A DNA stretch of 64,000 nt from Octopus sinensis (lineage: Eukaryota): positions 114,018,001-114,082,000 of the forward strand of contig NC_043003.1 in assembly GCF_006345805.1 (NCBI RefSeq). Reading direction: 5' to 3'. The notes beneath the pieces were generated by a model. The model was not told the DNA's origin and did not search any database. It was given only the letters and a program-made list of their open reading frames with translations. The translations under genes and the position numbers were made by a program. Below, piece by piece: positions 6,470 through 60,511 of this stretch; the stretch's first letter is position 1, and each line of letters starts with the position of its first letter.

Positions 6470-8030
6470 CTGGCTAAAATCAATGGATGCGGACCGTAGC
6501 CCTGAACATTTCCTTTCCCAGGCGATTACCCCAGTGAAAGGCAAAACAATCACTCGCCGTGAACTACCGACCGATCTCACTTACCTCTGATATACTTTTC
6601 TACTCTAGGCACAAGGCCCAAAATTTTAGGGAAGAAGAACAGTCAATCAGATTAACCCCATTACGCAACTGGTACTTAATTTATCGACCCCGAAATGATG
6701 AAAGGCAAAGTCGACCTCGGCAGAATTTGAACTCAAAACATAGAGACAGTCGATTTACCTCTCATATCTTCAAATTATTTGAGAGAGTGAAGAGATCTCG
6801 AATCACTCACTTCTTGGAATCTAACAGCCTGATTATTCCCAACCAACATGGCTTCCGCAATGGAAACGACTGCTTAACACAGCTCTTTCATCATTTCAAT
6901 GACATCTTAAAGGCCACGAGAGAGGGCTCCTATGCAGACGTCATATACCTTGACTCCAGCAAAGCCTTTGACAGGGTTGATCGCTGCATCCTGTTAAAGA
7001 AACTCTCCAACATCGGAGTCCGAGGAAAACTGTTAGCTTGGATTAAATGTTTTCTGATGAACAGAACTCAACAAGTGGTAATTGATGGTGTTCGATTGAC
7101 CTCAGCCAGGGTCCCACAAGGCACTGTATTGGACCCGCTCCTTTTCATAATTTATATTAATGACATCACTGACGTCATCAAACACAGTAGCAAACATATT
7201 TTCACCGATGATTATAAGTTACTGATGGTTGTTAACAGGGTTGAAGATCAGACAACTCTTCAATCTGATCTGTTATCCAATGGGCGGAGAAACGCAATAT
7301 GCAGTTGCACGAGAAACAAATTCAACCTGATCCACTTCGGTAAAGACAATGCATTCCAACAACCAAACACTCTCCCCACGGGCGAAACCCTCGTGGCATC
7401 CAGCACTGCTGGGTATTACTGTTGACTAGAAAATAAGCTGGAGTGTTCACATACACAGCAAAGTTGACATGGCTCGCAGGGCGTGCTCCTGGATCCTAAG
7501 GACTTTCTGGTCTAGAGACGCCCCAACCATTATCCTACTTTTCTCTAGTTTTGCTCGGCCTCACCTTGAATGCTGTTGTCCGCTGTGGTCTCTCCAGACG
7601 ATACAGAATATCATGAAAATTGAAGCTCCCCAGAGATCAATCCCTCCAAAATAGATGACATGACAAGCCTTGACTATTGGGATCGACTCAAAAAGCTCAG
7701 GCTTTACTCCCTTCGACGCCGCGGTGAGCGCTATATCATCTGTATGATGCGGAAATTAATCCATCAACATTGCCCAAACGATATAGGTATCAACTTAAAA
7801 AATCGAGGCTTGGGTCCTGTGCCATCCGTCCACTACAGAATTCATGTTCGTGTCGTATCACAACCCTACGACAGAACTACTTCCCCTCAACTGGGCCTGC
7901 TCTCTTCAACATTGTGCCAGCCCCACATAAAGGAGGAAAGTGATTTCACGACATTCAAAAGGTCCCTAGATGGATTACCTCCAACAAATACCAGACAAAC
8001 CACCCACACCCGTGCCAAATTACTCTGAAA
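6470..8030 (+). mobile_element. Degenerate CR1-like LINE ORF2 (RT to 3' end), with a SINE fragment inserted at ~6640-6742
   Basis: NYRPISLTS, NQHGFR, DVIYLDSSKAFDRV, VPQGTVLDPLLFIIYINDI, FTDDYKL, ARPHLECC, DYWDRLKKLRLYSLRRR; frameshifts and stops. Confidence 0.9.
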
Positions 8031-8629: not shown

Positions 8630-8916
8630 CCAGTTTTCAGTTTTTCATTTATTTTCATTGATCGGGGTGATTCGGGCATTCAATTACATTGACTTTGGGA
8701 AAAGGACAAACGGAATTTCGAACGGCCTCCTAAATATATGATTATATAAATTATGTATAAATACTTAAATATATAATTACATCAGTAAGCTACTTTAAAT
8801 TGTTATATTTCCATGTGCACGCCGGACAGAAAATGCTTAGTGGCATTTCGTCCGTCTGAGTTCAAATACTGTTGAGGTCAACTTTGGCTTTTATATTTTT
8901 GGCTTCGATAAAGTAT

Positions 8917-9332
8917 ATATTTCTTTACTACCCACAAGGGGCTAAACACAGTGGGGACAAACAAGGACAGACAAACGGATTAAGTCGATTGCATCGACTC
9001 CAGTGCGTAACTGGTACTTAATTTATCGACCCCGAAAGGATGAAAGGCAAAGTCGACCTCGGCGGAAGTTGAACTCAGAACGTAACGGCAGACGAAATAT
9101 CTATTTCTTTATTACCCACAAGAGGCTAAACATAGAGGGGACAAACAAAGACAGACATAGGTATTAAGTCGATTGCATCGACTCCAGTGCGTAACTGGTA
9201 CTTAATTTATCGACCCCGTAAGGATGAAAGGCAAAGTCGACCTCGGCGAAATTTGAACTCAGAACGTAACGGCAGACGAAATACCGCTAGGCATTTCACC
9301 TGGCGTGCTAACGTTTCTGCCAGCTCGCTGCC
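8917..9332 (-). mobile_element. Dimeric SINE (family B): full unit plus headless unit
   Basis: Two tandem copies of the body GTCGACTTTGCCTTTCATCCTTTCGGGGTCGATAAATTAAGTACC; only one has the GGCAGCGAGCTGGCAGAAACG head. Confidence 0.9.
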
Positions 9333-9502: not shown

Positions 9503-9916
9503 TTACTCTTTACTCTTTACTCTTTACTTGTTTCAGTCATTTGACTGGGGCCATGCTGGAGCACCGCCTTTAGTCGAACAAATCGACCCCCAGGACTTAT
9601 TCTTTGTAAGCCTAGTACTTATTCTATCGGTCACTTCATCCGAACTGCTAAGTTACGGGGACGTAAACACACCAGCATCGGTTGTCAAGCGATGTTGGGG
9701 GGGGGGACAAACACAGACACACAAACACACACACACATATATATACATATATACGACGGGCTTCTTTCAGTTTCCGTCTACCAAATCCACTCACAAGGCA
9801 TTGGTCGGCCAGAGGCTATAGTAGAAGACACTTGGCCAAGGTGCCACGCAGTGGGACTGATCCCGGAACCATGTGGTTGGTAAGCAAGCTACTTACCACA
9901 CAGCCACTCCTGCGCC
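9503..9916 (-). mobile_element. tRNA-derived SINE with CORE-like segment, internal TA/TG microsatellite and (AAAGAGT)n tail (family A)
   Basis: Head GGCGCAGGAGTGGCTGTGTGGTAAG; CTGCGTGGCACCTTGGCCAAGT resembles the CORE domain; many copies in window. Confidence 0.9.
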
Positions 9917-12339: not shown

Positions 12340-12940
12340 GATGACGATATCGAGAACGACAAAGACAAGGATGATGTTGATGATGAGGATGCTGATGATG
12401 ACGACGACGATGATGATGACGATGCCGAAGATAATGATGACGACGACGACGACGATGATTATGATGACAACGACGATGATGGTGATGAGGATGCTGATGA
12501 TGACGACGACGATGATGACAACGACGATGATGACGACGATGATGATGATGATGATGCCGAAGATAATGACGACGACGACAACGATGATGATGACAACGAT
12601 GATGATGATGACAACGACGATTATGATGACGACAACGACGATGATGACGACGACGATTATGATGACGACAACGACGATGATGGTGATGCTGATGATGACG
12701 ACGACGATGATGACGACGACGACGACGACAACGACGACGATGACAACGACGACGATGACGGCGACGACGACGATGATGATGCCGAAGATAATGATGACGA
12801 CGATGATGATAACAACAATGATGACGACGACGATTATGATGACGACAATGACGATGAGGATGCTGCTGATGATGACGACGACGATGATGACAACGACGAC
12901 GATGACGGCGACGACGACGACAACGATGATGATGATGATG
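12340..12940. repeat. Long (GAT/GAC)n trinucleotide repeat with higher-order sub-repeats
   Basis: Direct reading; GATGCCGAAGATAATGA and GATGAGGATGCTG motifs each recur three times. Confidence 0.95.
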
Positions 12941-14199
12941 AAAGAGATTTGAGAAGATTCGGAGGTATTGATGTTAGTGTTTTCGATTGCGGTAATGGAA
13001 ACTGCTGTAATTTCTGATGTGGGTTTTATTTCTTGTTCAGGACGGAGAGTCCGGTCGTTGCGTCGACGACCGGGGATCAAAAGATATTTCAGCCATGAGA
13101 AACGCATTATATTCGCAGACATCGCATAGCTTGAGCGACACAAAATATTGTGCTCTTCCATTTCTAAGACTATAGGAAGAGATTTGAGGGAGATTTGGCT
13201 GCTGTTTGTAGTGGGTGGCTGCTGTGAGTCTTCTATTGCTGGTGCTGAAGTTCGCTGTTATTGATATTTAGTTATCGATTAGCTCTGATCAAACAAACAT
13301 GACGAATAAATAAATGTTGAAGTTATGGCTTAGCTTTAGAAATTGCGAAACCCGAACAGCATCGTCCGATGTGTTTTTTGTTTGGAAGACAGTAAAATGT
13401 TATTTGAAGGAGATTTGGTTACTAATGCCAGAAAATTAAGCACAGAGAGACTCCTTCACTGTTTCGCTTCCTAACGGTAGGAGTGGTGACAATGTTGATG
13501 GTGGTGGCGGTGGGACATATTTGGCTGTGGTCTCAGCTTGAATACTTAAGCCAAAACATCGAATCCACTTTGACATATCCCCATCTCGTCACTCTTTCGC
13601 TTTCTCTCTCTCCTTCTCCCGCTCTCTTACATTATATTAATCAAAATTAAAAATAAATATATAAAAACCACAAGTATGACGCTTCCAACTGGATTCAAGT
13701 CGCAAATGTTGATTTTTATCCCGTTTATGTGTTCTTTATAATAATTGGATTTCTCGGCGCTTGATCAAATGTGGTCAGTGGTCAAAGTGGTGCTAGAAGT
13801 CTCTGCAATTCTTGTCGTTGGATTGTGAACTGGTCTGGTTTCGATTCATGTATGTTGCTCACCAGCGGTCAAGTTTGGAGACACACATTGAACATACATA
13901 CGTACATACGTTCACACATACATACCTTCATACAGTCTTACATACATACATTCATACATACATTTATATATAAATACATATGTACAAACATACATACATA
14001 CATTCGGTTATCTTAATTTTTAAAAATAAAAAAAAGGATAAAAATACCGCATTATTTATGGGATGTCCCAATACATACATACATACATACATACATACAT
14101 ACATACATACATACATACATACATACATACATGCATGCATGCATTCATCTATGCATACTGCTAAACAGCAACAAAGATAAATACATAAACTTAGTGCTG

Positions 14200-14602: not shown

Positions 14603-14946
14603 TACTCTTTTTACTCTTTTACTTGTTTCAGTCATTTGACTGCGGCCATGCTGGAGCACCGCCTTAAGTTGAGCAAATCGACCCCAGGACTTATTCTTTG
14701 TAAGCCCAGTACTTATTCTATCGGTCTCTTTTGCCGAACCGCTAAGTGACGGGGACGTAAACACACCAGCATCGGTTGTGAAGCAATGCTAGGGGGACAA
14801 ACACACACACACACAAACACACACATACATATTTATATATATACACATATATACGACAGACTTCTTTCTGTTTCCGTCTACCAAATCCACTCACAAGGCA
14901 TTGGTCGGCCCGAGGCTATAGCAGATGACACTTGCCCAAGATGCCA
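14603..14946 (-). mobile_element. SINE family A, head-truncated
   Basis: Matches 9503-9916. Confidence 0.9.
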
Positions 14947-18450: not shown

Positions 18451-18849
18451 CTCTTTTACTCTTTTACTTGTTTCAGTCATTTGACTGTGGCCATGCTGGA
18501 GCACCACCTTTAGTCGAAGAAATCAACCCTAGGACTTATTCTGTGTAAGCCTAGTACTTAGTCTATCGGTTTCTTTTGCCGAACCGCTAAGTTACGGGAA
18601 CATAAACACACCAGCATCGATTGTCAAGCGATGTTGGGGGGTCACACAGACACACAAACATATACACACACACATGCATACATATACGACGGGCTTCTTT
18701 CAGTTTCTGTCTACCAAATCGACTCACAAGGCTTTGGTCGGTCCGAGGCTATAGTAGAAGACATTTGCCCAAGGAGCCACGCGGTGAGACTGAGCCCAGA
18801 ACCATGTGGTTGGTAAGCAAGCTACTTACTACATAGCCACTCCTGCACC
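18451..18849 (-). mobile_element. SINE family A, full length
   Basis: Matches 9503-9916. Confidence 0.9.
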
Positions 18850-21166: not shown

Positions 21167-21582
21167 CTATTTTTTTATTGCCCATAAGGGGCTAAACATA
21201 GAGGGGACAAACAAAGACAGACAAAGGGATTAAGTCGATTACATCGACCCCAGTGCATAACTGGTACTTAATTTATCGACCCCGAAAGGATGAAAGGCAA
21301 AGTCGATCTCGGCGGAATTTGAACTCAGAACGTAGCGGCAGACGAAATACCTATTTCTTTACTATCCACAAAGGGCTAAACACAGAGAGGACAAACAAGG
21401 ACAGACAAACGGATTAAGTTGATTATATCGACCCCAGTGCGAAACTGGTACTTATTTAATCGACCCCTAAAGGATGAAAGGCAAAGTCGACCTCTGCGGA
21501 ATTTGAACTCACAACGTAACGGCAGACGAAAAGCGGCTACGCATTTCGTCCGGCGTGCTAACGTTTCTACCATCTCTCCGCC
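21167..21582 (-). mobile_element. Dimeric SINE (family B)
   Basis: Same head+body+body layout as 8917-9332. Confidence 0.9.
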
Positions 21583-21993: not shown

Positions 21994-22404
21994 ATACCTA
22001 TTTCTTTATTGCCCACAAGGGGCTAAACACAGATACGACAAACAAGGACAGACAAACGGATTAAATCGATTATATCGACGCCAGTGTGTAACTGGTACTT
22101 AATTTATCGACCTCGAAAGGATGAAAGATAAAGTCGACCTCGGCGGAAGTTGAACTCAGAATGTAGCGGCAGACGAAATACCTATTTCTTTATTACCCAC
22201 AAGGGGCTAAACACGGAGGGGACAAACAAGGACAGACATAGGTATTAAGTTGATTACATCGACCCCAGTGCGTAACTGGTACTTAATTTATTGACCCCGA
22301 AAGGATGAAAGGCAAAGTCGACCTCGGCGGAATTTGAACTCACAACGTAGCGGCAGACGAAATACCGCTAAGCATTTCGCCCGGCGTGCTAACGTTTCTG
22401 CCAG
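21994..22404 (-). mobile_element. Dimeric SINE (family B) with 14-bp TSD
   Basis: TTTCCCTCACTTTG at 21980-21993 and 22405-22418. Confidence 0.92.
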
Positions 22405-30206: not shown

Positions 30207-30611
30207 TTACTCTTTACTCTTTTACTTGTTTCAGTCATTTGACTGCGGCCATGCTGGAGCACCACCTTTAGTCGAGCAAATCGACCCCGGGACTTATTCT
30301 TTGTAAGCCTAGTACTTATTCTATCGGTCTCTTTTGTCGGACCGCTAAGTGACGGTGACGTAAACACACCAGCATCGATCGTCAAGCAATGCTAGGGGGA
30401 AAAACACAGACACACAAACATATACACATACATATATATACATATATACGACAGGCTTCTTTCAGTTTCCGTCTACCAAATTCACTCACAAGGCATTGGT
30501 CGGCCCGAGGCTATAGGAGAGGACACTTACCCAATATGCCACGCAGTGGGACTGAACCCGGAACCATGTTGTTGGTAAGCAAGCTACTTACCACACAGCC
30601 ACTCCTGCGCC
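30207..30611 (-). mobile_element. SINE family A, full length
   Basis: Matches 9503-9916. Confidence 0.9.
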
Positions 30612-37388: not shown

Positions 37389-37807
37389 GGCGCAGGAGTG
37401 GCTGTGTGGTAAGTAGATTGCTTACCAACCACATGGTTCCGGGTTCATTCCCACTGCGTGGCACCTTGGGCAAGTGTCTTCTACTATAGCCTCGGGCCGA
37501 CCAAAGCCTTGTGAGTGGATTTGGTAGGCGGAAACTGGAAGAAGCCCGTTGTATATATGTATATATGTATATATATATGTGTGTGTATATGTTTGTGTGT
37601 CTGTGTTTATCCCCCCCCCACCATTGCTTGACAACCGACGGTGGTGTGTTTTCGTCCTCGTAACTTAGCGGTTCAGCAAAAGAGACTGATAGAATAAGTA
37701 CTAGGCTTACAAAGAATAAGTCCTGGGGTCGATTTACTCGACTAAAAGGCGGTGCTCCAGTATGACCGCAGTCAAATGACTGAAACAAGTAAAAGAGTAA
37801 AAGAGTA
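37389..37807 (+). mobile_element. SINE family A, full length
   Basis: GGCGCAGGAGTGG head to AAAAGAGT tail. Confidence 0.92.
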
Positions 37808-39574: not shown

Positions 39575-39740
39575 GGCGCAGGAGTGGCTGTGTGGTAAGT
39601 AGCTTGCTAACCAACCACATGGTTGCGGGTTCAGTCCCACTGCGTGGTATCTTGGGCCAGGTGTCTTCTGCTATAGCCCCGGGCCGACCAATGCCTTGTG
39701 AGTGGATTTGGTATACGGAAACTGAAAGAAGCCTGTCGTA

Positions 39741-39799
<59 letters not shown>

Positions 39800-40011
39800 G
39801 TTTGTGTGTCTGTATTTGTCCCCCTAGCATTGCTTGACAACCGATGCTGGTGTGTTTACGTTCCCGTCACTTAGCGGTTCGGCAAAAGAGACCGATAGAA
39901 TAAGTACTGGGCTTACAAAGAATAAGTCCCGGGGTCGATTTGCTCGACTAAAGGCGGTGCTCCAGCATCTCCGCAGTCAAATGACTGAAACAAGTAAAAG
40001 AGTAAAGAGTA
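39575..40011 (+). mobile_element. SINE family A, full length
   Basis: GGCGCAGGAGTGG head to AAAGAGT tail. Confidence 0.92.
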
Positions 40012-41935: not shown

Positions 41936-41976
<41 letters not shown>

Positions 41977-41980
<4 letters not shown>

Positions 41981-42348
41981 TATGCATACATTATATATGT
42001 GTGTGTGTATCAACACCCACAAACGTACATCCTACAAAAGCACACAGGCACACACACAAACACACATGAATATCTTTCCAATAAAACCGGCCAATTATCT
42101 GTATACCGTGTATCCCAATGCAACCTGATATATATTCATTGTCATGGACAGATGTCAGACAAATAATACGTTAAACCGACAGTCTGTTTGAAATCCTAAT
42201 TGCTTCTGTATCGGAGTTTCAAAAGTTCGCTCTATAACGTTCTATTGTGCATTTAGTATTTACTGGGCAGTGTTTTTTTTTATCTCTTCAAACGAATATG
42301 CGAATATCTCCTTTCTTTGACGACATATAACATATGATATCAGATACA

Positions 42349-42379
<31 letters not shown>

Positions 42380-42772
42380 TATATATATATATATATATAT
42401 AGTATATGCATACATTATATATGTGTGTGTGTATCAACACCCACAAACGTACATCCTACAAAAGCACACAGGCACACACACAAACACACATGAATATCTT
42501 TCCAATAAAACCGGCCAATTATCTGTATACCGTGTATCCCAATGCAACCTGATATATATTCATTGTCATGGACAGATGTCAGACAAATAATACGTTAAAC
42601 CGACAGTCTGTTTGAAATCCTAATTGCTTCTGTATCGGAGTTTCAAAAGTTCGCTCTATAACGTTCTATTGTGCATTTAGTATTTACTGGGCAGTGTTTT
42701 TTTTTATCTCTTCAAACGAATATGCGAATATCTCCTTTCTTTGACGACATATAACATATGATATCAGATACA

Positions 42773-42775
<3 letters not shown>
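41977..42775. repeat. Two near-identical ~424-bp tandem copies bounded by (TG)n(TA)n
   Basis: AGTATATGCA at 41977 and 42401; unit sequence identical by eye. Confidence 0.92.
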
Positions 42776-42815
<40 letters not shown>

Positions 42816-55317: not shown

Positions 55318-56856
55318 TTCTTTCTCTCTCTTCTCTCTCTTTGTTGCGTTTTGTCCCTCGTCTCTCTCTCTCTTCCTTTGCTTCTCTTTCTTTTCTTTTC
55401 CCTCTTCTCTGTCACGTGACTGTTGGCCGAAATCTGCCTTTCAGCTCCTGACCCTCGTCGTGTTAACATCGTTGTTTTTCGTCCGCCGCTATAAAGGCTT
55501 CTTCCAATGCGCCAGAGAAAAAATTTGTTTGCTTGTTATCAGTCGTAAGACACTTGTTGTTTTCACCGTTAATGCTTCTGTATTTCATGTTTCTGTATTC
55601 CATTATTGTTTTTTGTTTTTTTTATATCTGTCCCTTTTGCTGTCCTGGTGTTCGTATGCATTCGATCCTTCTTCCAGGAAATCTACGCTTCCAGCTTAGT
55701 TTTTCTAATGCTCGTTGCTTAGTTTTTCTTGGAGGGCTGGCCGTGATCTAGTAATCTCAAGATTAATCAGCCGAAATTACTACGATGATCCGGTTCTTGA
55801 CTGAAGACTGAGGGGTTCGAATGTCCTGTCCATGTTTATTGTGTCGTCTTCTAAGAGTTATACGTTCTTGTCCATGTTGTATTTTTCTACATACCTTAAC
55901 ATATATTCCAGGCGCCCCGTACCCACCTTATCATTAATGTGAGCACATATTCTTAATAATGGTACGACTCTCTTTTTGTCTCCCTCTCTCTCTCATTTTT
56001 ACTTGATCTGTCCCCCTCTCTCTCTCTTTGTCTCGCTCTGCACTCACAGGTCATTCTTCGACACCCATCCCTTCTCCTCTCTGATCCCTTCTTCTCTCTC
56101 TTCTCTCTCTTTGTTGCGTTTTGTCCCTCGTCTCTCTCTCTCTTCCTTTGCTTCTCTTTCTTTTCTTTTCCCTCTTCTCTGTCACGTGACTGTTGGCCGA
56201 AATCTGCCTTCAGCTCCTGACCCTCGTCGTGTTAACATCGTTGTTTTTCGTCCGCCGCTATAAAGGCTTCTTCCAATGCGCCAGAGAAAAAATTTGTTTG
56301 CTTGTTATCAGTCGTAAGACACTTGTTGTTTTCACCGTTAATGCTTCTGTATTTCATGTTTCTCTATTCCATTATTGTTTTTTGTTTTTTTTATATCTGT
56401 CCCTTTTGCTGTCCTGGTGTTCGTATGCATTCGATCCTTCTTCCAGGAAATCTACGCTTCCAGCTTAGTTTTTCTAATGCTCGTTGCTTAGTCTTTCTTG
56501 GAGGGCTGGCCGTGATCTAGTAATCTCAAGATTAATCAGCCGAAATCACTACGATGATCCGGTTCTTGACTGAAGACTGAGGGGTTCGAATGTCCTGTCC
56601 ATGTTTATTGTGTCGTCTTCTAAGAGTTATACGTTCTTGTCCATGTTGTATTTTTCTACATACCTTAACATATATTCCAGGCGCCCCGTACCCACCTTAT
56701 CATTAATGTGAGCACATATTCTTAATAATTGGTACGACTCTCTTTTTGTCTCCCTCTCTCTCTCATTTTTACTTGATATGTCCCCCTCTCTCTCTCTTGT
56801 CTCGCTCTGCACTCACAGGTCATTCTTCGACACCCATCCTTCTCCTCTCTGATCCT

Positions 56857-56891
<35 letters not shown>

Positions 56892-58214
56892 GCGTTTTGT
56901 CCCTCGTCTCTCTCTCTCTTCCTTTGCTTCTCTTTCTTTTCTTTTCCCTCTTCTCTGTCACGTGACTGTTGGCCGAAATCTGCCTTTCAGCTCCTGACCC
57001 TCGTCGTGTTAACATCGTTGTTTTTCGTCCGCCGCTATAAGGCTTCTTCCAATGCGCCAGAGAAAAAATTTGTTTGCTTGTTATCAGTCGTAAGACACTT
57101 GTTGTTTTCACCGTTAATGCTTCTGTATTTCATGTTTCTGTATTCCATTATTGTTTTTTGTTTTTTTTATATCTGTCCCTTTTGCTGTCCTGGTGTTCGT
57201 ATGCATTCGATCCTTCTTCCAGGAAATCTACGCTTCCAGCTTAGTTTTTCTAATGCTCGTTGCTTAGTTTTTCTTGGAGGGCTGGCCGTGATCTAGTAAT
57301 CTCAAGATTAATCAGCCGAAATTACTACGATGATCCGGTTCTTGACTGAAGACTGAGGGGTTCGAATGTCCTGTCCATGTTTATTGTGTCGTCTTCTAAG
57401 AGTTATACGTTCTTGTCCATGTTGTATTTTTCTACATACCTTAACATATATTCCAGGCGCCCCGTACCCACCTTATCATTAATGTGAGCACATATTCTTA
57501 ATAATTGGTACGACTCTCTTTTTGTCTCCCTCTCTCTCTCATTTTTACTTGATCTGTCCCCCTCTCTCTCTCTTTGTCTCGCTCTGCACTCACAGGTCAT
57601 TCTTCGACACCCATCCCTTCTCCTCTCTGATCCCTTCTTTCTCTCTCTTCTCTCTCTTTGTTGCGTTTTGTCCCTCGTCTCTCTCTCTCTTCCTTTGCTT
57701 CTCTTTCTTTTCTTTTCCCTCTTCTCTGTCACGTGACTGTTGGCCGAAATCTGCCTTTCAGCTCCTGACCCTCGTCGTGTTAACATCGTTGTTTTTCGTC
57801 CGCCGCTATAAAGGCTTCTTCCAATGCGCCAGAGAAAAAATTGTTTGCTTGTTATCAGTCGTAAGACACTTGTTGTTTTCACCGTTAATGCTTCTGTATT
57901 TCATGTTCTGTATTCCATTATTGTTTTTTGTTTTTTTTATATCTGTCCCTTTTGCTGTCCTGGTGTTCGTATGCATTCGATCCTTCTTCCAGGAAATCTA
58001 CGCTTCCAGCTTAGTTTTTCTAATGCTCGTTGCTTAGTCTTTCTTGGAGGGCTGGCCGTGATCTAGTAATCTCAAGATTAATCAGCCGAAATTACTACGA
58101 TGATCCGGTTCTTGACTGAAGACTGAGGGGTTCGAATGTCCTGTCCATGTTTATTGTGTCGTCTTCTAAGAGTTATACGTTCTTGTCCATGTTGTATTTT
58201 TCTACATACCTTAA
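55318..58214. repeat. Head-to-tail tandem array, ~772-bp unit x ~3.75
   Basis: TGTTGGCCGAAATCTG at 55421, 56191, 56967 and 57738 (periods 770, 776, 771). Confidence 0.97.
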
Positions 58215-58229
58215 TATATATATATATAT

Positions 58230-58276
<47 letters not shown>

Positions 58277-58299
58277 ATATATATATGTATGTGTGTGTG

Positions 58300-58500
58300 T
58301 GTGTTTGTCCCCCTAGCATTGTTTGACAACCGATGCTGGTGTGTTTACGTCCCCGTCACTTAGCGGTTCGGCAAAAGAAACCGATAGAATAAGTACTGGG
58401 CTTACAAAGAATAAGTCTCGGGGTCGATTTGCTCGACTAAAGGCGGTGCTCCAACATGGCCGCAGTCAAATGACTGAAACAAGTAAAAGAGTAAAGAGTA
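58300..58500 (+). mobile_element. SINE family A, 3' half
   Basis: Matches the 3' half of 39575-40011. Confidence 0.9.
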
Positions 58501-58860: not shown

Positions 58861-59455
58861 CATGTCTACGTTTATTATAAACATGCGTAGACATACTGAA
58901 ACATTCTCATACGTGTATATAATAATGCTATTACATTCATTAATACCATCATTACGATATTTGTTTGTTGTGAAATTAATCGATGTGATACGGCCCTCGC
59001 AATCGAACCCCTGGCAATTAGATTCATTTGTACCCTCCATGGAAAGGTCTTAAGATCTATTGATTTGTATATAACAAGTATTTCCCCCCAATAACATAAT
59101 ATTGTGTGCTCTGATAAAGTAGTCCCGTTCCGTATGGGGAGAAGATTTAATGCCAAAAGCCCAGCTTATTTCATTTTTTTCCCAAAGATTCGGCTTCACT
59201 CAGATTGGTAGAAGGAAAAGATACGTCAAACAAGAAACATAACTCAGAGCATTAAGTAATCCATAGATTAGGGTTCGAAACAGACTGCATTATATATACT
59301 TATATATAAATTATATATATATATATACATAAGTGGTTCATAACGGTAACTAGAAGTTCTATTCAATTAAACTCAACGAATCCGGCATTGAGTGTTCTCG
59401 TGACTTTGACCTGTGTATCTAACACTCTTATCGCTTTCTGATTGTGTATATATAT

Positions 59456-59502
<47 letters not shown>

Positions 59503-59532
59503 GCGAGAAAAAAGCAACAAGAATGGATAGGT

Positions 59533-59623
59533 TTTTAGTACAATCGTTTCATACAAGGACAGGCTTTATTAAAAGTTGCAAAAATTGCAGCATATAAACG
59601 TGTCCCGTACTCATCAGCTAAAA
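59533..59623 (-). ncRNA. Type I hammerhead ribozyme, left arm
   Basis: Exact reverse complement of 60245-60335. Confidence 0.8.
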
Positions 59624-60244
59624 TACATGTGAGTTCTCTAGACATCCTAGTGGTTGAGGCTATACTCATGAAGTAATGTAGATAATTAAGTAACATAAAC
59701 AGATTTCCAAAGTTCATTAAAGTTCTTTAAAGATGATGTACAGTCTTATCACAGAATTTTAAAAAAGTTTTAATAGCATCACAGAGAAGGTGACTTAATC
59801 CATAGTGTACATATGAATTTCCAGAGATATGAGGAGGGATTACATACTCACAGACGACAAATTTATCCATTGCTAATCACAACGAGGTGGGTTTCAATTC
59901 CTGCTTATTAGCATTACAGAGAGGGTGAATTAATCCTTTGTATAGATGCACAATTTCCAATGGTGTAGATGTAAATTTCCAGAGAAATGAAGAGGAATTT
60001 CATATTCACAGGCGATAAATTTATCAATGGTTGAACACAATGAGGTGGGTATCAATTCTTGCTATATGATTAGGTATTTGCCACATTAATCACATTACTG
60101 CTATTTTCAAGAGACTGTAGCTATTTAACTTTTAATGGCTGAAGGGCTTTCTGAACTTTGGAAATCTGTTTATGTTACTTAATTATCTACATTACTTCAT
60201 GAGTATAGCCTCAACCACTAGGATGTCTAGAGAACTCACATGTA

Positions 60245-60335
60245 TTTTAGCTGATGAGTACGGGACACGTTTATATGCTGCAATTTTTGCAACTTTTAAT
60301 AAAGCCTGTCCTTGTATGAAACGATTGTACTAAAA
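60245..60335 (+). ncRNA. Type I hammerhead ribozyme, right arm; predicted cleavage after GUA at 60329
   Basis: UUUUAG CUGAUGA GUACGGGACA [extended hairpin] UGUCCUUGUAU GAAA C GAUU GUA CUAAAA; all core nucleotides canonical. Confidence 0.8.
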
Positions 60336-60480
60336 ACCTATCCATTCTTGTTGCTTTTTTCTCGCTTATAATCACCCCACATTACTGTATTGTTAAAACC
60401 GTATAGTTTGTTTTGGTGCATCTAAGTTAGGTACCATATTCAAGTAAATTCATTTAAATTAACTTGAATCTTTATTGCTT

Positions 60481-60511
<31 letters not shown>

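What the first reader, a model, noticed from the sequence alone, without database searches (positions are those of the whole stretch)
59503..60365. Foldback element whose two perfect 214-bp arms each encode a canonical hammerhead ribozyme
Seen: 59503-59716 and 60152-60365 are exact reverse complements. Each arm contains, pointing outward, stem I UUUUAG/CUAAAA, core CUGAUGA, a long stem II (GUACGGGACA/UGUCCU-U-GUAU plus inner UUUAU/AUAAA and UGCAA/UUGCA helices), GAAA, and stem III ACGAUUGU ending in a GUA cleavage triplet. ACGAUUGU is self-complementary at all 8 positions (two G-U), the hallmark of dimer-dependent hammerheads. Cleavage would fall 36 nt inside each end. The left end abuts (TA)n and both ends have an outer TA. 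Known: PLE insertions can carry an inverted pLTR with hammerheads, whereas TA-flanked long TIRs indicate Tc1/mariner-type MITEs. Inference: either a PLE-derived inverted-pLTR insertion or an unusual TIR element with ribozyme ends. A read-through transcript from either strand has one sense ribozyme plus its perfect antisense upstream, so 214-bp dsRNA (an ADAR/Dicer substrate) would compete with self-cleavage and could act as a switch.
Basis: partly seen in the sequence, partly recalled or inferred. Interest (0 to 1): 0.9.

Follow-up and report, generated by a model that had tools for sequence, protein, structure and literature searches.

The report
Inverted Penelope-like retroelement ends with hammerheads
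This is most likely the footprint of one recent retrotransposon insertion (Penelope-like type) that left two head-to-head copies of its ribozyme-bearing end beside a (TA)n microsatellite, an arrangement already described for these elements and so fairly ordinary.

Summary
59503-59716 and 60152-60365 are exact reverse complements (214 bp). Each arm carries, pointing outward, a complete type I hammerhead motif (60245-60335 +, 59533-59623 -), with the cleavage site 36 nt from the outer end.

The motif is not a chance match. A generic hammerhead descriptor hits only these two sites and none in 300 random windows. Rfam Hammerhead_1 aligns end to end, but only at 18.4 bits against a cut-off of 34. 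The causes are a 60-nt helix II and a G-U pair where G10.1-C11.1 is normally conserved. "Canonical" therefore overstates it.

The element is non-coding, unique in the window, abuts (TA)28 on the left, and has a 435-bp non-palindromic middle.

This anatomy matches what is published for Penelope-like elements (PLEs). Those show a 5'-truncated copy with an inverted, shorter 5'-truncated copy next to it, hammerheads near the 3' ends, and AT-rich or (TA)n targets. The PLE enzyme cuts and extends both DNA strands.

I could not retrieve any other copy, an empty site or a linked RT/endonuclease gene. PLE membership is therefore inferred, not shown. A TIR/MITE element and an assembly artefact remain possible.

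The dsRNA "switch" idea is untested. The 214-bp hairpin (-477 kcal/mol) would simply swamp the ribozyme fold.

Verdict: new member of a known kind, low to moderate interest.

The parts
59447..59501 (.). (TA)28 microsatellite directly left of the element; presumed target site
   Evidence: Tandem Repeats Finder and sequence. Perfect (TA)>=8 arrays make up only 1.2% of the window.
59503..59716 (-). Left arm. Interpreted as the shorter, 5'-truncated copy (214 nt) of the element's 3' end; sense strand is -, 3' end at 59503.
   Evidence: Exact reverse complement of 60152-60365.
59533..59623 (-). Type I hammerhead motif of the left arm; predicted cleavage after 59539 on the - strand
   Evidence: Descriptor hit; identical in sequence to the right-arm motif.
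59717..60151 (.). 435-bp non-palindromic middle, unique to the longer copy. Which arm it continues cannot be told from one locus.
   Evidence: No inverted symmetry; no Pfam domain in six frames; no other copy in the window.
59770..60063 (+). Internal tandem duplication of about 135-160 bp (59770-59905 / 59905-60063), 82-87% identical, without a hammerhead motif
   Evidence: the repeat finder D2; blastn; descriptor scan.
60152..60365 (+). Right arm: 3'-terminal 214 nt of the element, sense strand +, 3' end at 60365
60245..60335 (+). Type I hammerhead motif: helix I 60245-50/60330-35, core 60251-57, helix II 60258-60317, GAA 60318-20, helix III 60321-28, A17 60329; cleavage after 60329.
   Evidence: Rfam RF00163 full-length alignment, 18.4 bits, E = 0.027 on 110 nt. 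Descriptor scans. Constrained fold -12.5 to -13.5 kcal/mol against an MFE of -14.5. Helix II z = -1.76.
60330..60365 (+). 36-nt segment between the cleavage site and the end of the element; unstructured. The outer end is interpreted as the reverse-transcription start site.
Evidence: Fold of 60318-60365: -0.3 kcal/mol, z = +1.27.

Best explanation
The 863-bp unit is the product of one recent retrotransposition event of the Penelope-like (PLE) type, not a functional 'foldback ribozyme device'.

The template RNA was the pseudo-LTR / 3' region of a PLE, or of a non-autonomous derivative made only of that region. It carried a type I hammerhead 36 nt upstream of the point where reverse transcription starts.

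The proposed steps are all inferred:
1. The PLE enzyme, supplied in trans, cut both DNA strands at the edge of a (TA)n microsatellite.
2. Each 3'-OH primed reverse transcription at the same site on the template.
3. Two cDNAs therefore grew towards each other from identical 3' ends.
4. They were joined head to head after 214 nt (one copy) and 649 nt (the other).

This accounts for four observations. The outer ends are identical and the ribozymes point outward. The arms are identical to the base. The middle is not palindromic. The inner boundary of the repeat is just an arbitrary 5'-truncation point.

The hammerhead belongs to the PLE life cycle. It presumably processes tandem transcripts, as a dimer through its short palindromic helix III, possibly with protein help. 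At this locus it is probably inert. There is only one sense copy per transcript, and any read-through RNA folds into a 214-bp hairpin that buries it.

What is shown: the repeat, the motif, the lack of coding capacity and the (TA)n flank. What is inferred: the PLE origin, the two-strand priming, and the inactivity of the ribozyme here.
For: - Exact 214-bp inverted repeat with a 435-bp asymmetric middle.
- Full hammerhead motif in each arm, sense strand outward, cleavage 36 nt from the end. Chance expectation is below about 0.003-0.03 per window.
- Rfam Hammerhead_1 is the top family on the stretch, aligned over model positions 1-45 of 45.
- Helix III is a 2-bp stem with a 4-nt loop and is fully palindromic. 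This is the feature described for metazoan and PLE hammerheads that act as dimers (PMC4209133, PMC6765202).
- No protein domain in any frame.
- The left end abuts (TA)28, while such arrays are 1.2% of the window.
- PMC11167929: a purified PLE protein cleaves and extends both strands, prefers AT-rich DNA and starts reverse transcription at a fixed internal site.
- PMC4209133: pairs of minimal hammerheads 100-700 bp apart on opposite strands were already seen in Schistosoma mansoni.
- The window looks cephalopod. A LINE RT has its best named relative in Argonauta hians, and a SINE family resembles the octopus one (from memory). Octopus vulgaris has 31 recently active PLE families (PMC13282606).
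- Zero differences in 214 bp imply an age under about 2 million years, using that paper's rate. This is an inference.
Against: - No RT or GIY-YIG remnant in the element, and none anywhere in the window by tblastn with the Poseidon_Ac protein. The link to an autonomous PLE is not shown.
- No second copy could be found to test for shared 3' ends with variable 5' truncation. Protein look-ups, the metagenome scan (chance hits only) and the genome and viral scans all gave nothing.
- The hammerhead scores below Rfam's cut-off.
- No 30-40-bp 'tail' could be recognised.
- The two arms are identical, so they give no covariation evidence.
Confidence: 0.65

Rival explanations
1. A non-autonomous DNA transposon (MITE or foldback type) with 214-bp terminal inverted repeats. 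It moves by cut-and-paste into TA sites, and its repeats happen to derive from, or have captured, a hammerhead-bearing retroelement fragment.
For: Long perfect terminal inverted repeats and small size (863 bp) with no coding capacity. TA lies one base outside each arm, and the left end sits in (TA)n. 7% of all TA dinucleotides in the window lie in such arrays.
Against: Nothing in a cut-and-paste element explains a complete ribozyme placed symmetrically and pointing outward near each end. The TA is separated from each arm by a mismatched base (59502 C, 60366 T), and it is expected anyway in a (TA)n target. There is no similarity to a transposase. The published PLE architecture explains every feature without an extra assumption.
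Confidence: 0.12
2. Only one 5'-truncated copy (649 bp) was inserted. The second arm is secondary: either an assembly or foldback-read artefact, or a later inverted duplication by template switching at the hairpin-prone (TA)28.
For: The arms are identical to the base. PMC8557442 notes that such PLE structures often cause assembly problems. (TA)28 abuts the extra arm.
Against: The duplicated piece ends exactly at the element's own outer end and sits exactly at the other copy's 5' end, as expected from a single two-strand priming event. No other perfect foldback is present in the 64 kb. Reads are not available to test this.
Confidence: 0.12
3. A functional hairpin-RNA locus or ribozyme switch. 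The foldback is maintained by selection, and read-through RNA alternates between a 214-bp dsRNA (an ADAR/Dicer substrate) and self-cleavage. Alternatively, it is a DNA copy of a viroid-like RNA with hammerheads in both polarities.
For: The geometry allows it. The cephalopod context would provide abundant ADAR activity (general knowledge). The arms are perfectly conserved relative to each other.
Against: The hairpin is about -477 kcal/mol, against about -13 kcal/mol for the ribozyme fold. The short helix III implies a need for a second sense copy, which is absent in cis. Perfect arm identity is equally explained by youth. There is no conservation or expression evidence. A single cleavage site per strand cannot release a unit-length RNA.
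Confidence: 0.05
4. The hammerhead-like motif is a chance resemblance inside an unrelated inverted repeat.
For: The motif is below Rfam's gathering score. It has a G-U pair at 10.1-11.1. The overall fold is not more stable than shuffles (z = -0.69).
Against: All 11 invariant core bases and three correctly placed helices are present. There were 0 hits in 300 random windows. Helix II closes end to end. The context matches hammerhead-bearing retroelements.
Confidence: 0.04

Closest known systems
Penelope-like element insertions with an adjacent inverted 5'-truncated copy (Craig et al. 2021, PMC8557442, Fig. 2; mechanism in Frangieh et al. 2024, PMC11167929)
   Same: Inverted repeats formed by two copies that share the 3' end. 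Heavy 5' truncation. A hammerhead in the pseudo-LTR near the 3' end. A (TA)n / AT-rich target. No poly(A).
   Different: No RT/GIY-YIG reading frame is present or linked here. No recognisable 30-40-bp tail. The distance from cleavage site to end is 36 nt, against about 85-92 nt in Poseidon_Ac.
Minimal and canonical type I hammerheads of metazoan PLEs and satellites (Cervera & de la Pena 2014, PMC4209133; Rfam RF00163)
   Same: Type I topology and a 6-bp helix I. Helix III is a 2-bp stem with a 4-nt palindromic loop, which implies action as a dimer. No loop-loop contacts. Pairs on opposite strands 100-700 bp apart have been reported.
   Different: Helix II is 60 nt, against 4-8 bp in the published motifs. 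The 10.1-11.1 pair is G-U instead of G-C. [quoted passage not shown] The score is below the Rfam cut-off.
Non-LTR (metazoan) retrozymes (PMC7761336; bioRxiv 10.64898/2026.07.22.740005)
   Same: Short, non-coding, type I hammerhead-bearing elements, thought to be mobilised by PLE enzymes.
   Different: Retrozymes are head-to-tail tandem arrays with one ribozyme per 150-400-nt unit, and they give circular RNAs. Here the two ribozymes are on opposite strands, and the internal tandem units lack a ribozyme.
Twin-priming inversions of LINE-1 (Ostertag & Kazazian 2001; from memory)
   Same: Both strands of the cut target prime reverse transcription, which gives a head-to-head junction.
   Different: In L1 the second priming is at an internal, non-specific site, so the two parts are different segments of the element. 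Here both start at the same site and duplicate the 3' end.
Tc1/mariner-type MITEs and foldback elements
   Same: Small, non-coding, with long terminal inverted repeats and TA-rich insertion sites.
   Different: No clean TA duplication. No known MITE family carries outward-facing hammerheads in its terminal repeats (to my knowledge).

Membership tests
Hammerhead ribozyme, type I (Rfam RF00163) | Invariant core: C3 U4 G5 A6 N7 G8 A9, G12 A13 A14, A15.1-U16.1, H17 not G | tested here: met
   CUGAUGA at 60251-57, GAA at 60318-20, A60321-U60328, A17 at 60329.
Hammerhead ribozyme, type I (Rfam RF00163) | Three helices around the core, helices II and III closed, helix I open | tested here: met
   Helix I is 6 bp. 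Helix II is a 60-nt hairpin that closes end to end. Helix III is 2 bp plus a 4-nt loop.
Hammerhead ribozyme, type I (Rfam RF00163) | Score at or above the family's gathering cut-off (34 bits) | tested here: not met
   18.4 bits, seen only when 110 nt are searched. No hit. The 54-nt insertion in helix II accounts for much of the loss.
Hammerhead ribozyme, type I (Rfam RF00163) | Conserved G10.1-C11.1 pair | tested here: not met
   G60258 pairs with U60317 (G-U wobble).
Hammerhead ribozyme, type I (Rfam RF00163) | Self-cleavage after H17; core conservation and covariation among relatives | not testable with these tools
   No relatives were retrieved. The two arms are identical.
Penelope-like element (PLE) insertion | Reading frame with telomerase-like RT and GIY-YIG endonuclease | tested here: not met
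   No Pfam domain in six frames of the element and flanks. tblastn with the Poseidon_Ac protein finds nothing in the window. This is expected for a 5'-truncated or non-autonomous copy, but it leaves membership unproven.
Penelope-like element (PLE) insertion | Hammerhead motif in the terminal repeat, near the 3' end, sense strand | tested here: met
   Cleavage site 36 nt from each outer end, pointing outward.
Penelope-like element (PLE) insertion | Tandem and/or inverted arrangement of 5'-truncated copies that share the 3' end | tested here: met
   Copies of 214 nt and 649 nt, head to head, with identical outer ends.
Penelope-like element (PLE) insertion | Optional 30-40-bp 'tail' at one end | tested here: inconclusive
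   The 120 bp between the right end and (TA)14 shows no significant similarity to the element. A tail cannot be recognised from one locus.
Penelope-like element (PLE) insertion | Insertion into AT-rich DNA or (TA)n | tested here: met
   The left end abuts (TA)28 and the right flank starts TTATAA.
Penelope-like element (PLE) insertion | Sequence continuity with an autonomous PLE of the same genome | not testable with these tools
   The source genome is not searchable here.
Non-LTR retrozyme | Head-to-tail tandem repeats, each unit with a type I hammerhead | tested here: not met
   Only two motifs, on opposite strands. The internal ~150-bp tandem units have none.
Tc1/mariner-type MITE | Terminal inverted repeats flanked directly by a duplicated TA | tested here: inconclusive
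   TA lies one mismatched base outside each arm. The target is (TA)n, so TA is expected by position.
Tc1/mariner-type MITE | Many copies with the same repeat boundaries | not testable with these tools
   No other copy in the window. The source genome is not available.

The most novel reading that the evidence does not exclude
The foldback is not a by-product of insertion. It would instead be a distinct kind of element or locus: either a TIR/foldback transposon whose ends are ribozymes, or a maintained hairpin-RNA gene in which a 214-bp dsRNA (an ADAR/Dicer substrate in a cephalopod) gates hammerhead self-cleavage.
Probability: 0.05. Interest if true: 0.7.

Novelty: new member of a known kind. 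Interest (0 to 1): 0.25.

Why it matters
If the main reading is right, the locus is a clean, very young example of the head-to-head double insertion predicted by the recent finding that a PLE enzyme cuts and extends both DNA strands. Both copies start at the same nucleotide, 36 nt past the ribozyme cleavage site. That pins the reverse-transcription start for this family and gives a junction to study.

It would also add a cephalopod hammerhead variant with an unusually long helix II and a G-U pair at 10.1-11.1.

It does not open a new question. The architecture, the ribozyme type and the target preference are all published.

Tried and rejected
- **Other copies through spurious reading frames of the arms.** Exact look-ups and a homology search found nothing.
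- **Empty-site or orthologue search through flanking reading frames**. Nothing on record. The 55-58 kb frames turned out to belong to a 775-bp tandem repeat, so they were unsuitable anyway.
- **Exact 17-mer scan of metagenome contigs**. It gave 54 loci, all chance matches of 17-22 nt.
- **Exact 23-mer scans of prokaryotic genome contigs and viral contigs**. Zero hits.
- **Supplements of PMC8557442 and PMC13282606.** No sequences are held.
- **PLE coding remnants.** The six-frame Pfam scan and tblastn with the Poseidon_Ac protein from the PMC11167929 supplement gave none.
- **The idea that 60366-60485 is a PLE 'tail' or an older element end**, prompted by 'TTGCTTTTTT' next to (TA)14. The similarity is not above shuffles, so it was dropped.
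- **Bacterial promoter/terminator scan**. Not relevant to a eukaryote.
- **Hammerhead dimer by co-folding**. The MFE dimer is not the helix III dimer, so it is uninformative.
- **Lunse et al. 2017.** The paper could not be read.

Full report
**Observation**

59503-59716 is the exact reverse complement of 60152-60365, 214 of 214 bases. The repeat finder extends the match to 219 nt with one mismatch (59502 C against 60366 T). That extension is only the palindromic TATA of the flanks. No other near-perfect long inverted repeat exists in the 64 kb. Neither the arm nor the 435-bp middle has another copy in the window.

The middle (59717-60151) is not palindromic. It contains a diverged tandem duplication of roughly 150 bp (59770-59905 / 59905-60063, 82-87% identical).

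(TA)28 (59447-59501) abuts the left end. On the right, 120 bp of unique sequence separate the element from (TA)14.

**The ribozyme motif**

On the + strand of the right arm the parts are as follows:

| Part | Coordinates | Sequence |
|---|---|---|
| Helix I, 5' side | 60245-60250 | UUUUAG |
| Core | 60251-60257 | CUGAUGA |
| Helix II | 60258-60317 | 60-nt hairpin |
| G12-A14 | 60318-60320 | GAA |
| Helix III | 60321-60328 | ACGAUUGU |
| A17 | 60329 | A |
| Helix I, 3' side | 60330-60335 | CUAAAA |

The mirror copy is on the - strand at 59533-59623. Cleavage would fall 36 nt from each outer end.

All invariant core bases are present. Helix III is a 2-bp stem with a 4-nt loop and is self-complementary over all eight bases, including two G-U pairs.

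A generic hammerhead descriptor requires helix I of at least 5 bp, helix II of at least 4 bp, and the A15.1-U16.1 and 15.2-16.2 pairs. It finds only these two sites in the window and none in 300 random windows of the same dinucleotide content. A much looser descriptor expects 0.033 hits per window.

Rfam is less generous. There is no hit at the gathering score on the window, and none at E<=10 on 1.1 kb. Only when 110 nt are searched does Hammerhead_1 (RF00163) appear. It is then the top family and aligns over the whole model (1-45), but at 18.4 bits against a cut-off of 34, E = 0.027. The alignment shows why: a 54-nt insertion in helix II and non-consensus helix II closing pairs.

The ribozyme fold lies 1-2 kcal/mol above the MFE of the 91-mer (-12.5 to -13.5 against -14.5). 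Helix II closes end to end and is modestly more stable than shuffles (z = -1.76). The 10.1-11.1 pair is G-U.

So the motif is real and hammerhead-like, but it is an atypical variant, not a "canonical" one. Its activity is unknown.

**What the element is**

The element has no protein domain in any of six frames. tblastn with a PLE protein (Poseidon_Ac, from the supplement of PMC11167929) finds nothing in the window.

The anatomy nevertheless matches the published description of PLE insertions point for point.

- Craig et al. 2021 (PMC8557442) state that insertions are highly 5'-truncated. [quoted passage not shown] Hammerheads lie in the pseudo-LTRs near the 3' ends, and (TA)n is a preferred target.
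- Frangieh et al. 2024 (PMC11167929) showed that a purified PLE protein cleaves and extends both DNA strands. It prefers AT-rich DNA and starts reverse transcription at a fixed internal site of the RNA.
- Cervera & de la Pena 2014 (PMC4209133) describe metazoan type I hammerheads with a 6-bp helix I and a 1-2-bp helix III capped by a small palindromic loop, which act as dimers. They also report pairs of hammerheads 100-700 bp apart on opposite strands.

I therefore read the locus as two cDNAs primed from the two strands of one cut at the edge of (TA)n. Both started at the same template position, 36 nt past the cleavage site. They met head to head after 214 and 649 nt.

This explains the identical outward ends, the outward-pointing ribozymes, the base-perfect arms and the asymmetric middle. 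Which arm continues into the middle cannot be decided from one locus.

A 7-mer (AAAGTTC) occurs on both sides of the inner boundary (59708-14 and 59719-25). It may mark microhomology at the junction, but I did not test this.

**Host and age**

The window is probably cephalopod, most likely octopod.
- A LINE-type RT frame (6538-7422) has its best named relative in Argonauta hians.
- A SINE-like family with at least seven copies resembles, from memory, the abundant octopus SINE.

Octopus vulgaris is reported to have 31 PLE families with recent insertions (PMC13282606). That paper's calibration equates a Jukes-Cantor distance of 0.09 with about 25 million years. On that rate, zero differences in 214 bp between the arms put the event, or the last homogenisation, at under about 2 million years at 95%. 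This is an inference and depends on the host assignment.

**Function at this locus**

The whole element folds as RNA into one 214-bp hairpin at -477 kcal/mol. A read-through transcript carries only one sense ribozyme. The short helix III implies a need for a second sense copy, and none is present in cis.

The ribozyme is therefore most likely silent here. The dsRNA "switch" has no support beyond geometry. Published work also finds PLE hammerheads weak in vitro, protein-assisted, and dispensable for insertion (PMC4209133, PMC11167929).

**Limits**

I could not obtain any related sequence. The attempts were:
- reading-frame look-ups and a homology search on arm frames;
- look-ups on flanking frames;
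- an exact-word scan of metagenomes, which gave only chance hits;
- scans of prokaryotic and viral contigs;
- paper supplements.

As a result, several things remain untested: core conservation and covariation, variable 5' truncation among copies, linkage to an RT/endonuclease gene, the empty site, and read support.

A TIR/MITE element (0.12), an artefactual or secondary inverted duplication (0.12), a functional hairpin locus (0.05) and a chance motif (0.04) therefore remain as rivals to the PLE reading (0.65).

**Verdict**

The thing is a new member of a known kind, and interest is low to moderate.

Noticed in passing
window 55319-58221: Tandem array of a ~775-bp unit, about 3.7 copies, 97.5-99% identical, strongly T/C-biased on the + strand. 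It gives repeated spurious reading frames and has no hammerhead motif.
   Followed up: partly
window 37389-37800; also 9517-9916, 30214-30611, 39575-40005, 18456-18849, 14611-14946, 58258-58494: SINE-like family with at least 7 copies at 85-89% identity. It carries an internal (TA/TG)n array, which accounts for many microsatellites of the window. It resembles the abundant octopus SINE (from memory, unverified).
   Followed up: partly
window 8914-9283, 21167-21531, 21994-22366: The same 184-bp unit is present three times, each time as a two-copy tandem (88-93% matches). This is a dispersed repeat that inserts or persists as dimers.
   Followed up: no
window 41940-42815: A 424-bp unit repeated 2.1 times at 99% identity, including a (TA)n tract. 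This is a very recent local duplication.
   Followed up: no
window 6538-7422 (+): LINE-type reverse transcriptase frame (RVT_1, E = 2.7e-17). The best named relative is a hypothetical protein of Argonauta hians (53%). It is not PLE-like.
   Followed up: partly
window 12370-12941: GAT/GAC triplet array of about 190 units, with open frames of 229-288 aa on both strands. It is either an acidic low-complexity exon or a plain microsatellite.
   Followed up: no
window 59708-59725: AAAGTTC occurs on both sides of the inner boundary of the inverted repeat (59716|59717). This may be microhomology at the head-to-head junction.
   Followed up: no
window 60464-60485: 'CTTTATTGCTTTTTTTT' next to (TA)14 resembles the element's end 'CTTGTTGCTTTTTTCTCGC'. 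The similarity is not above shuffled controls.
   Followed up: yes
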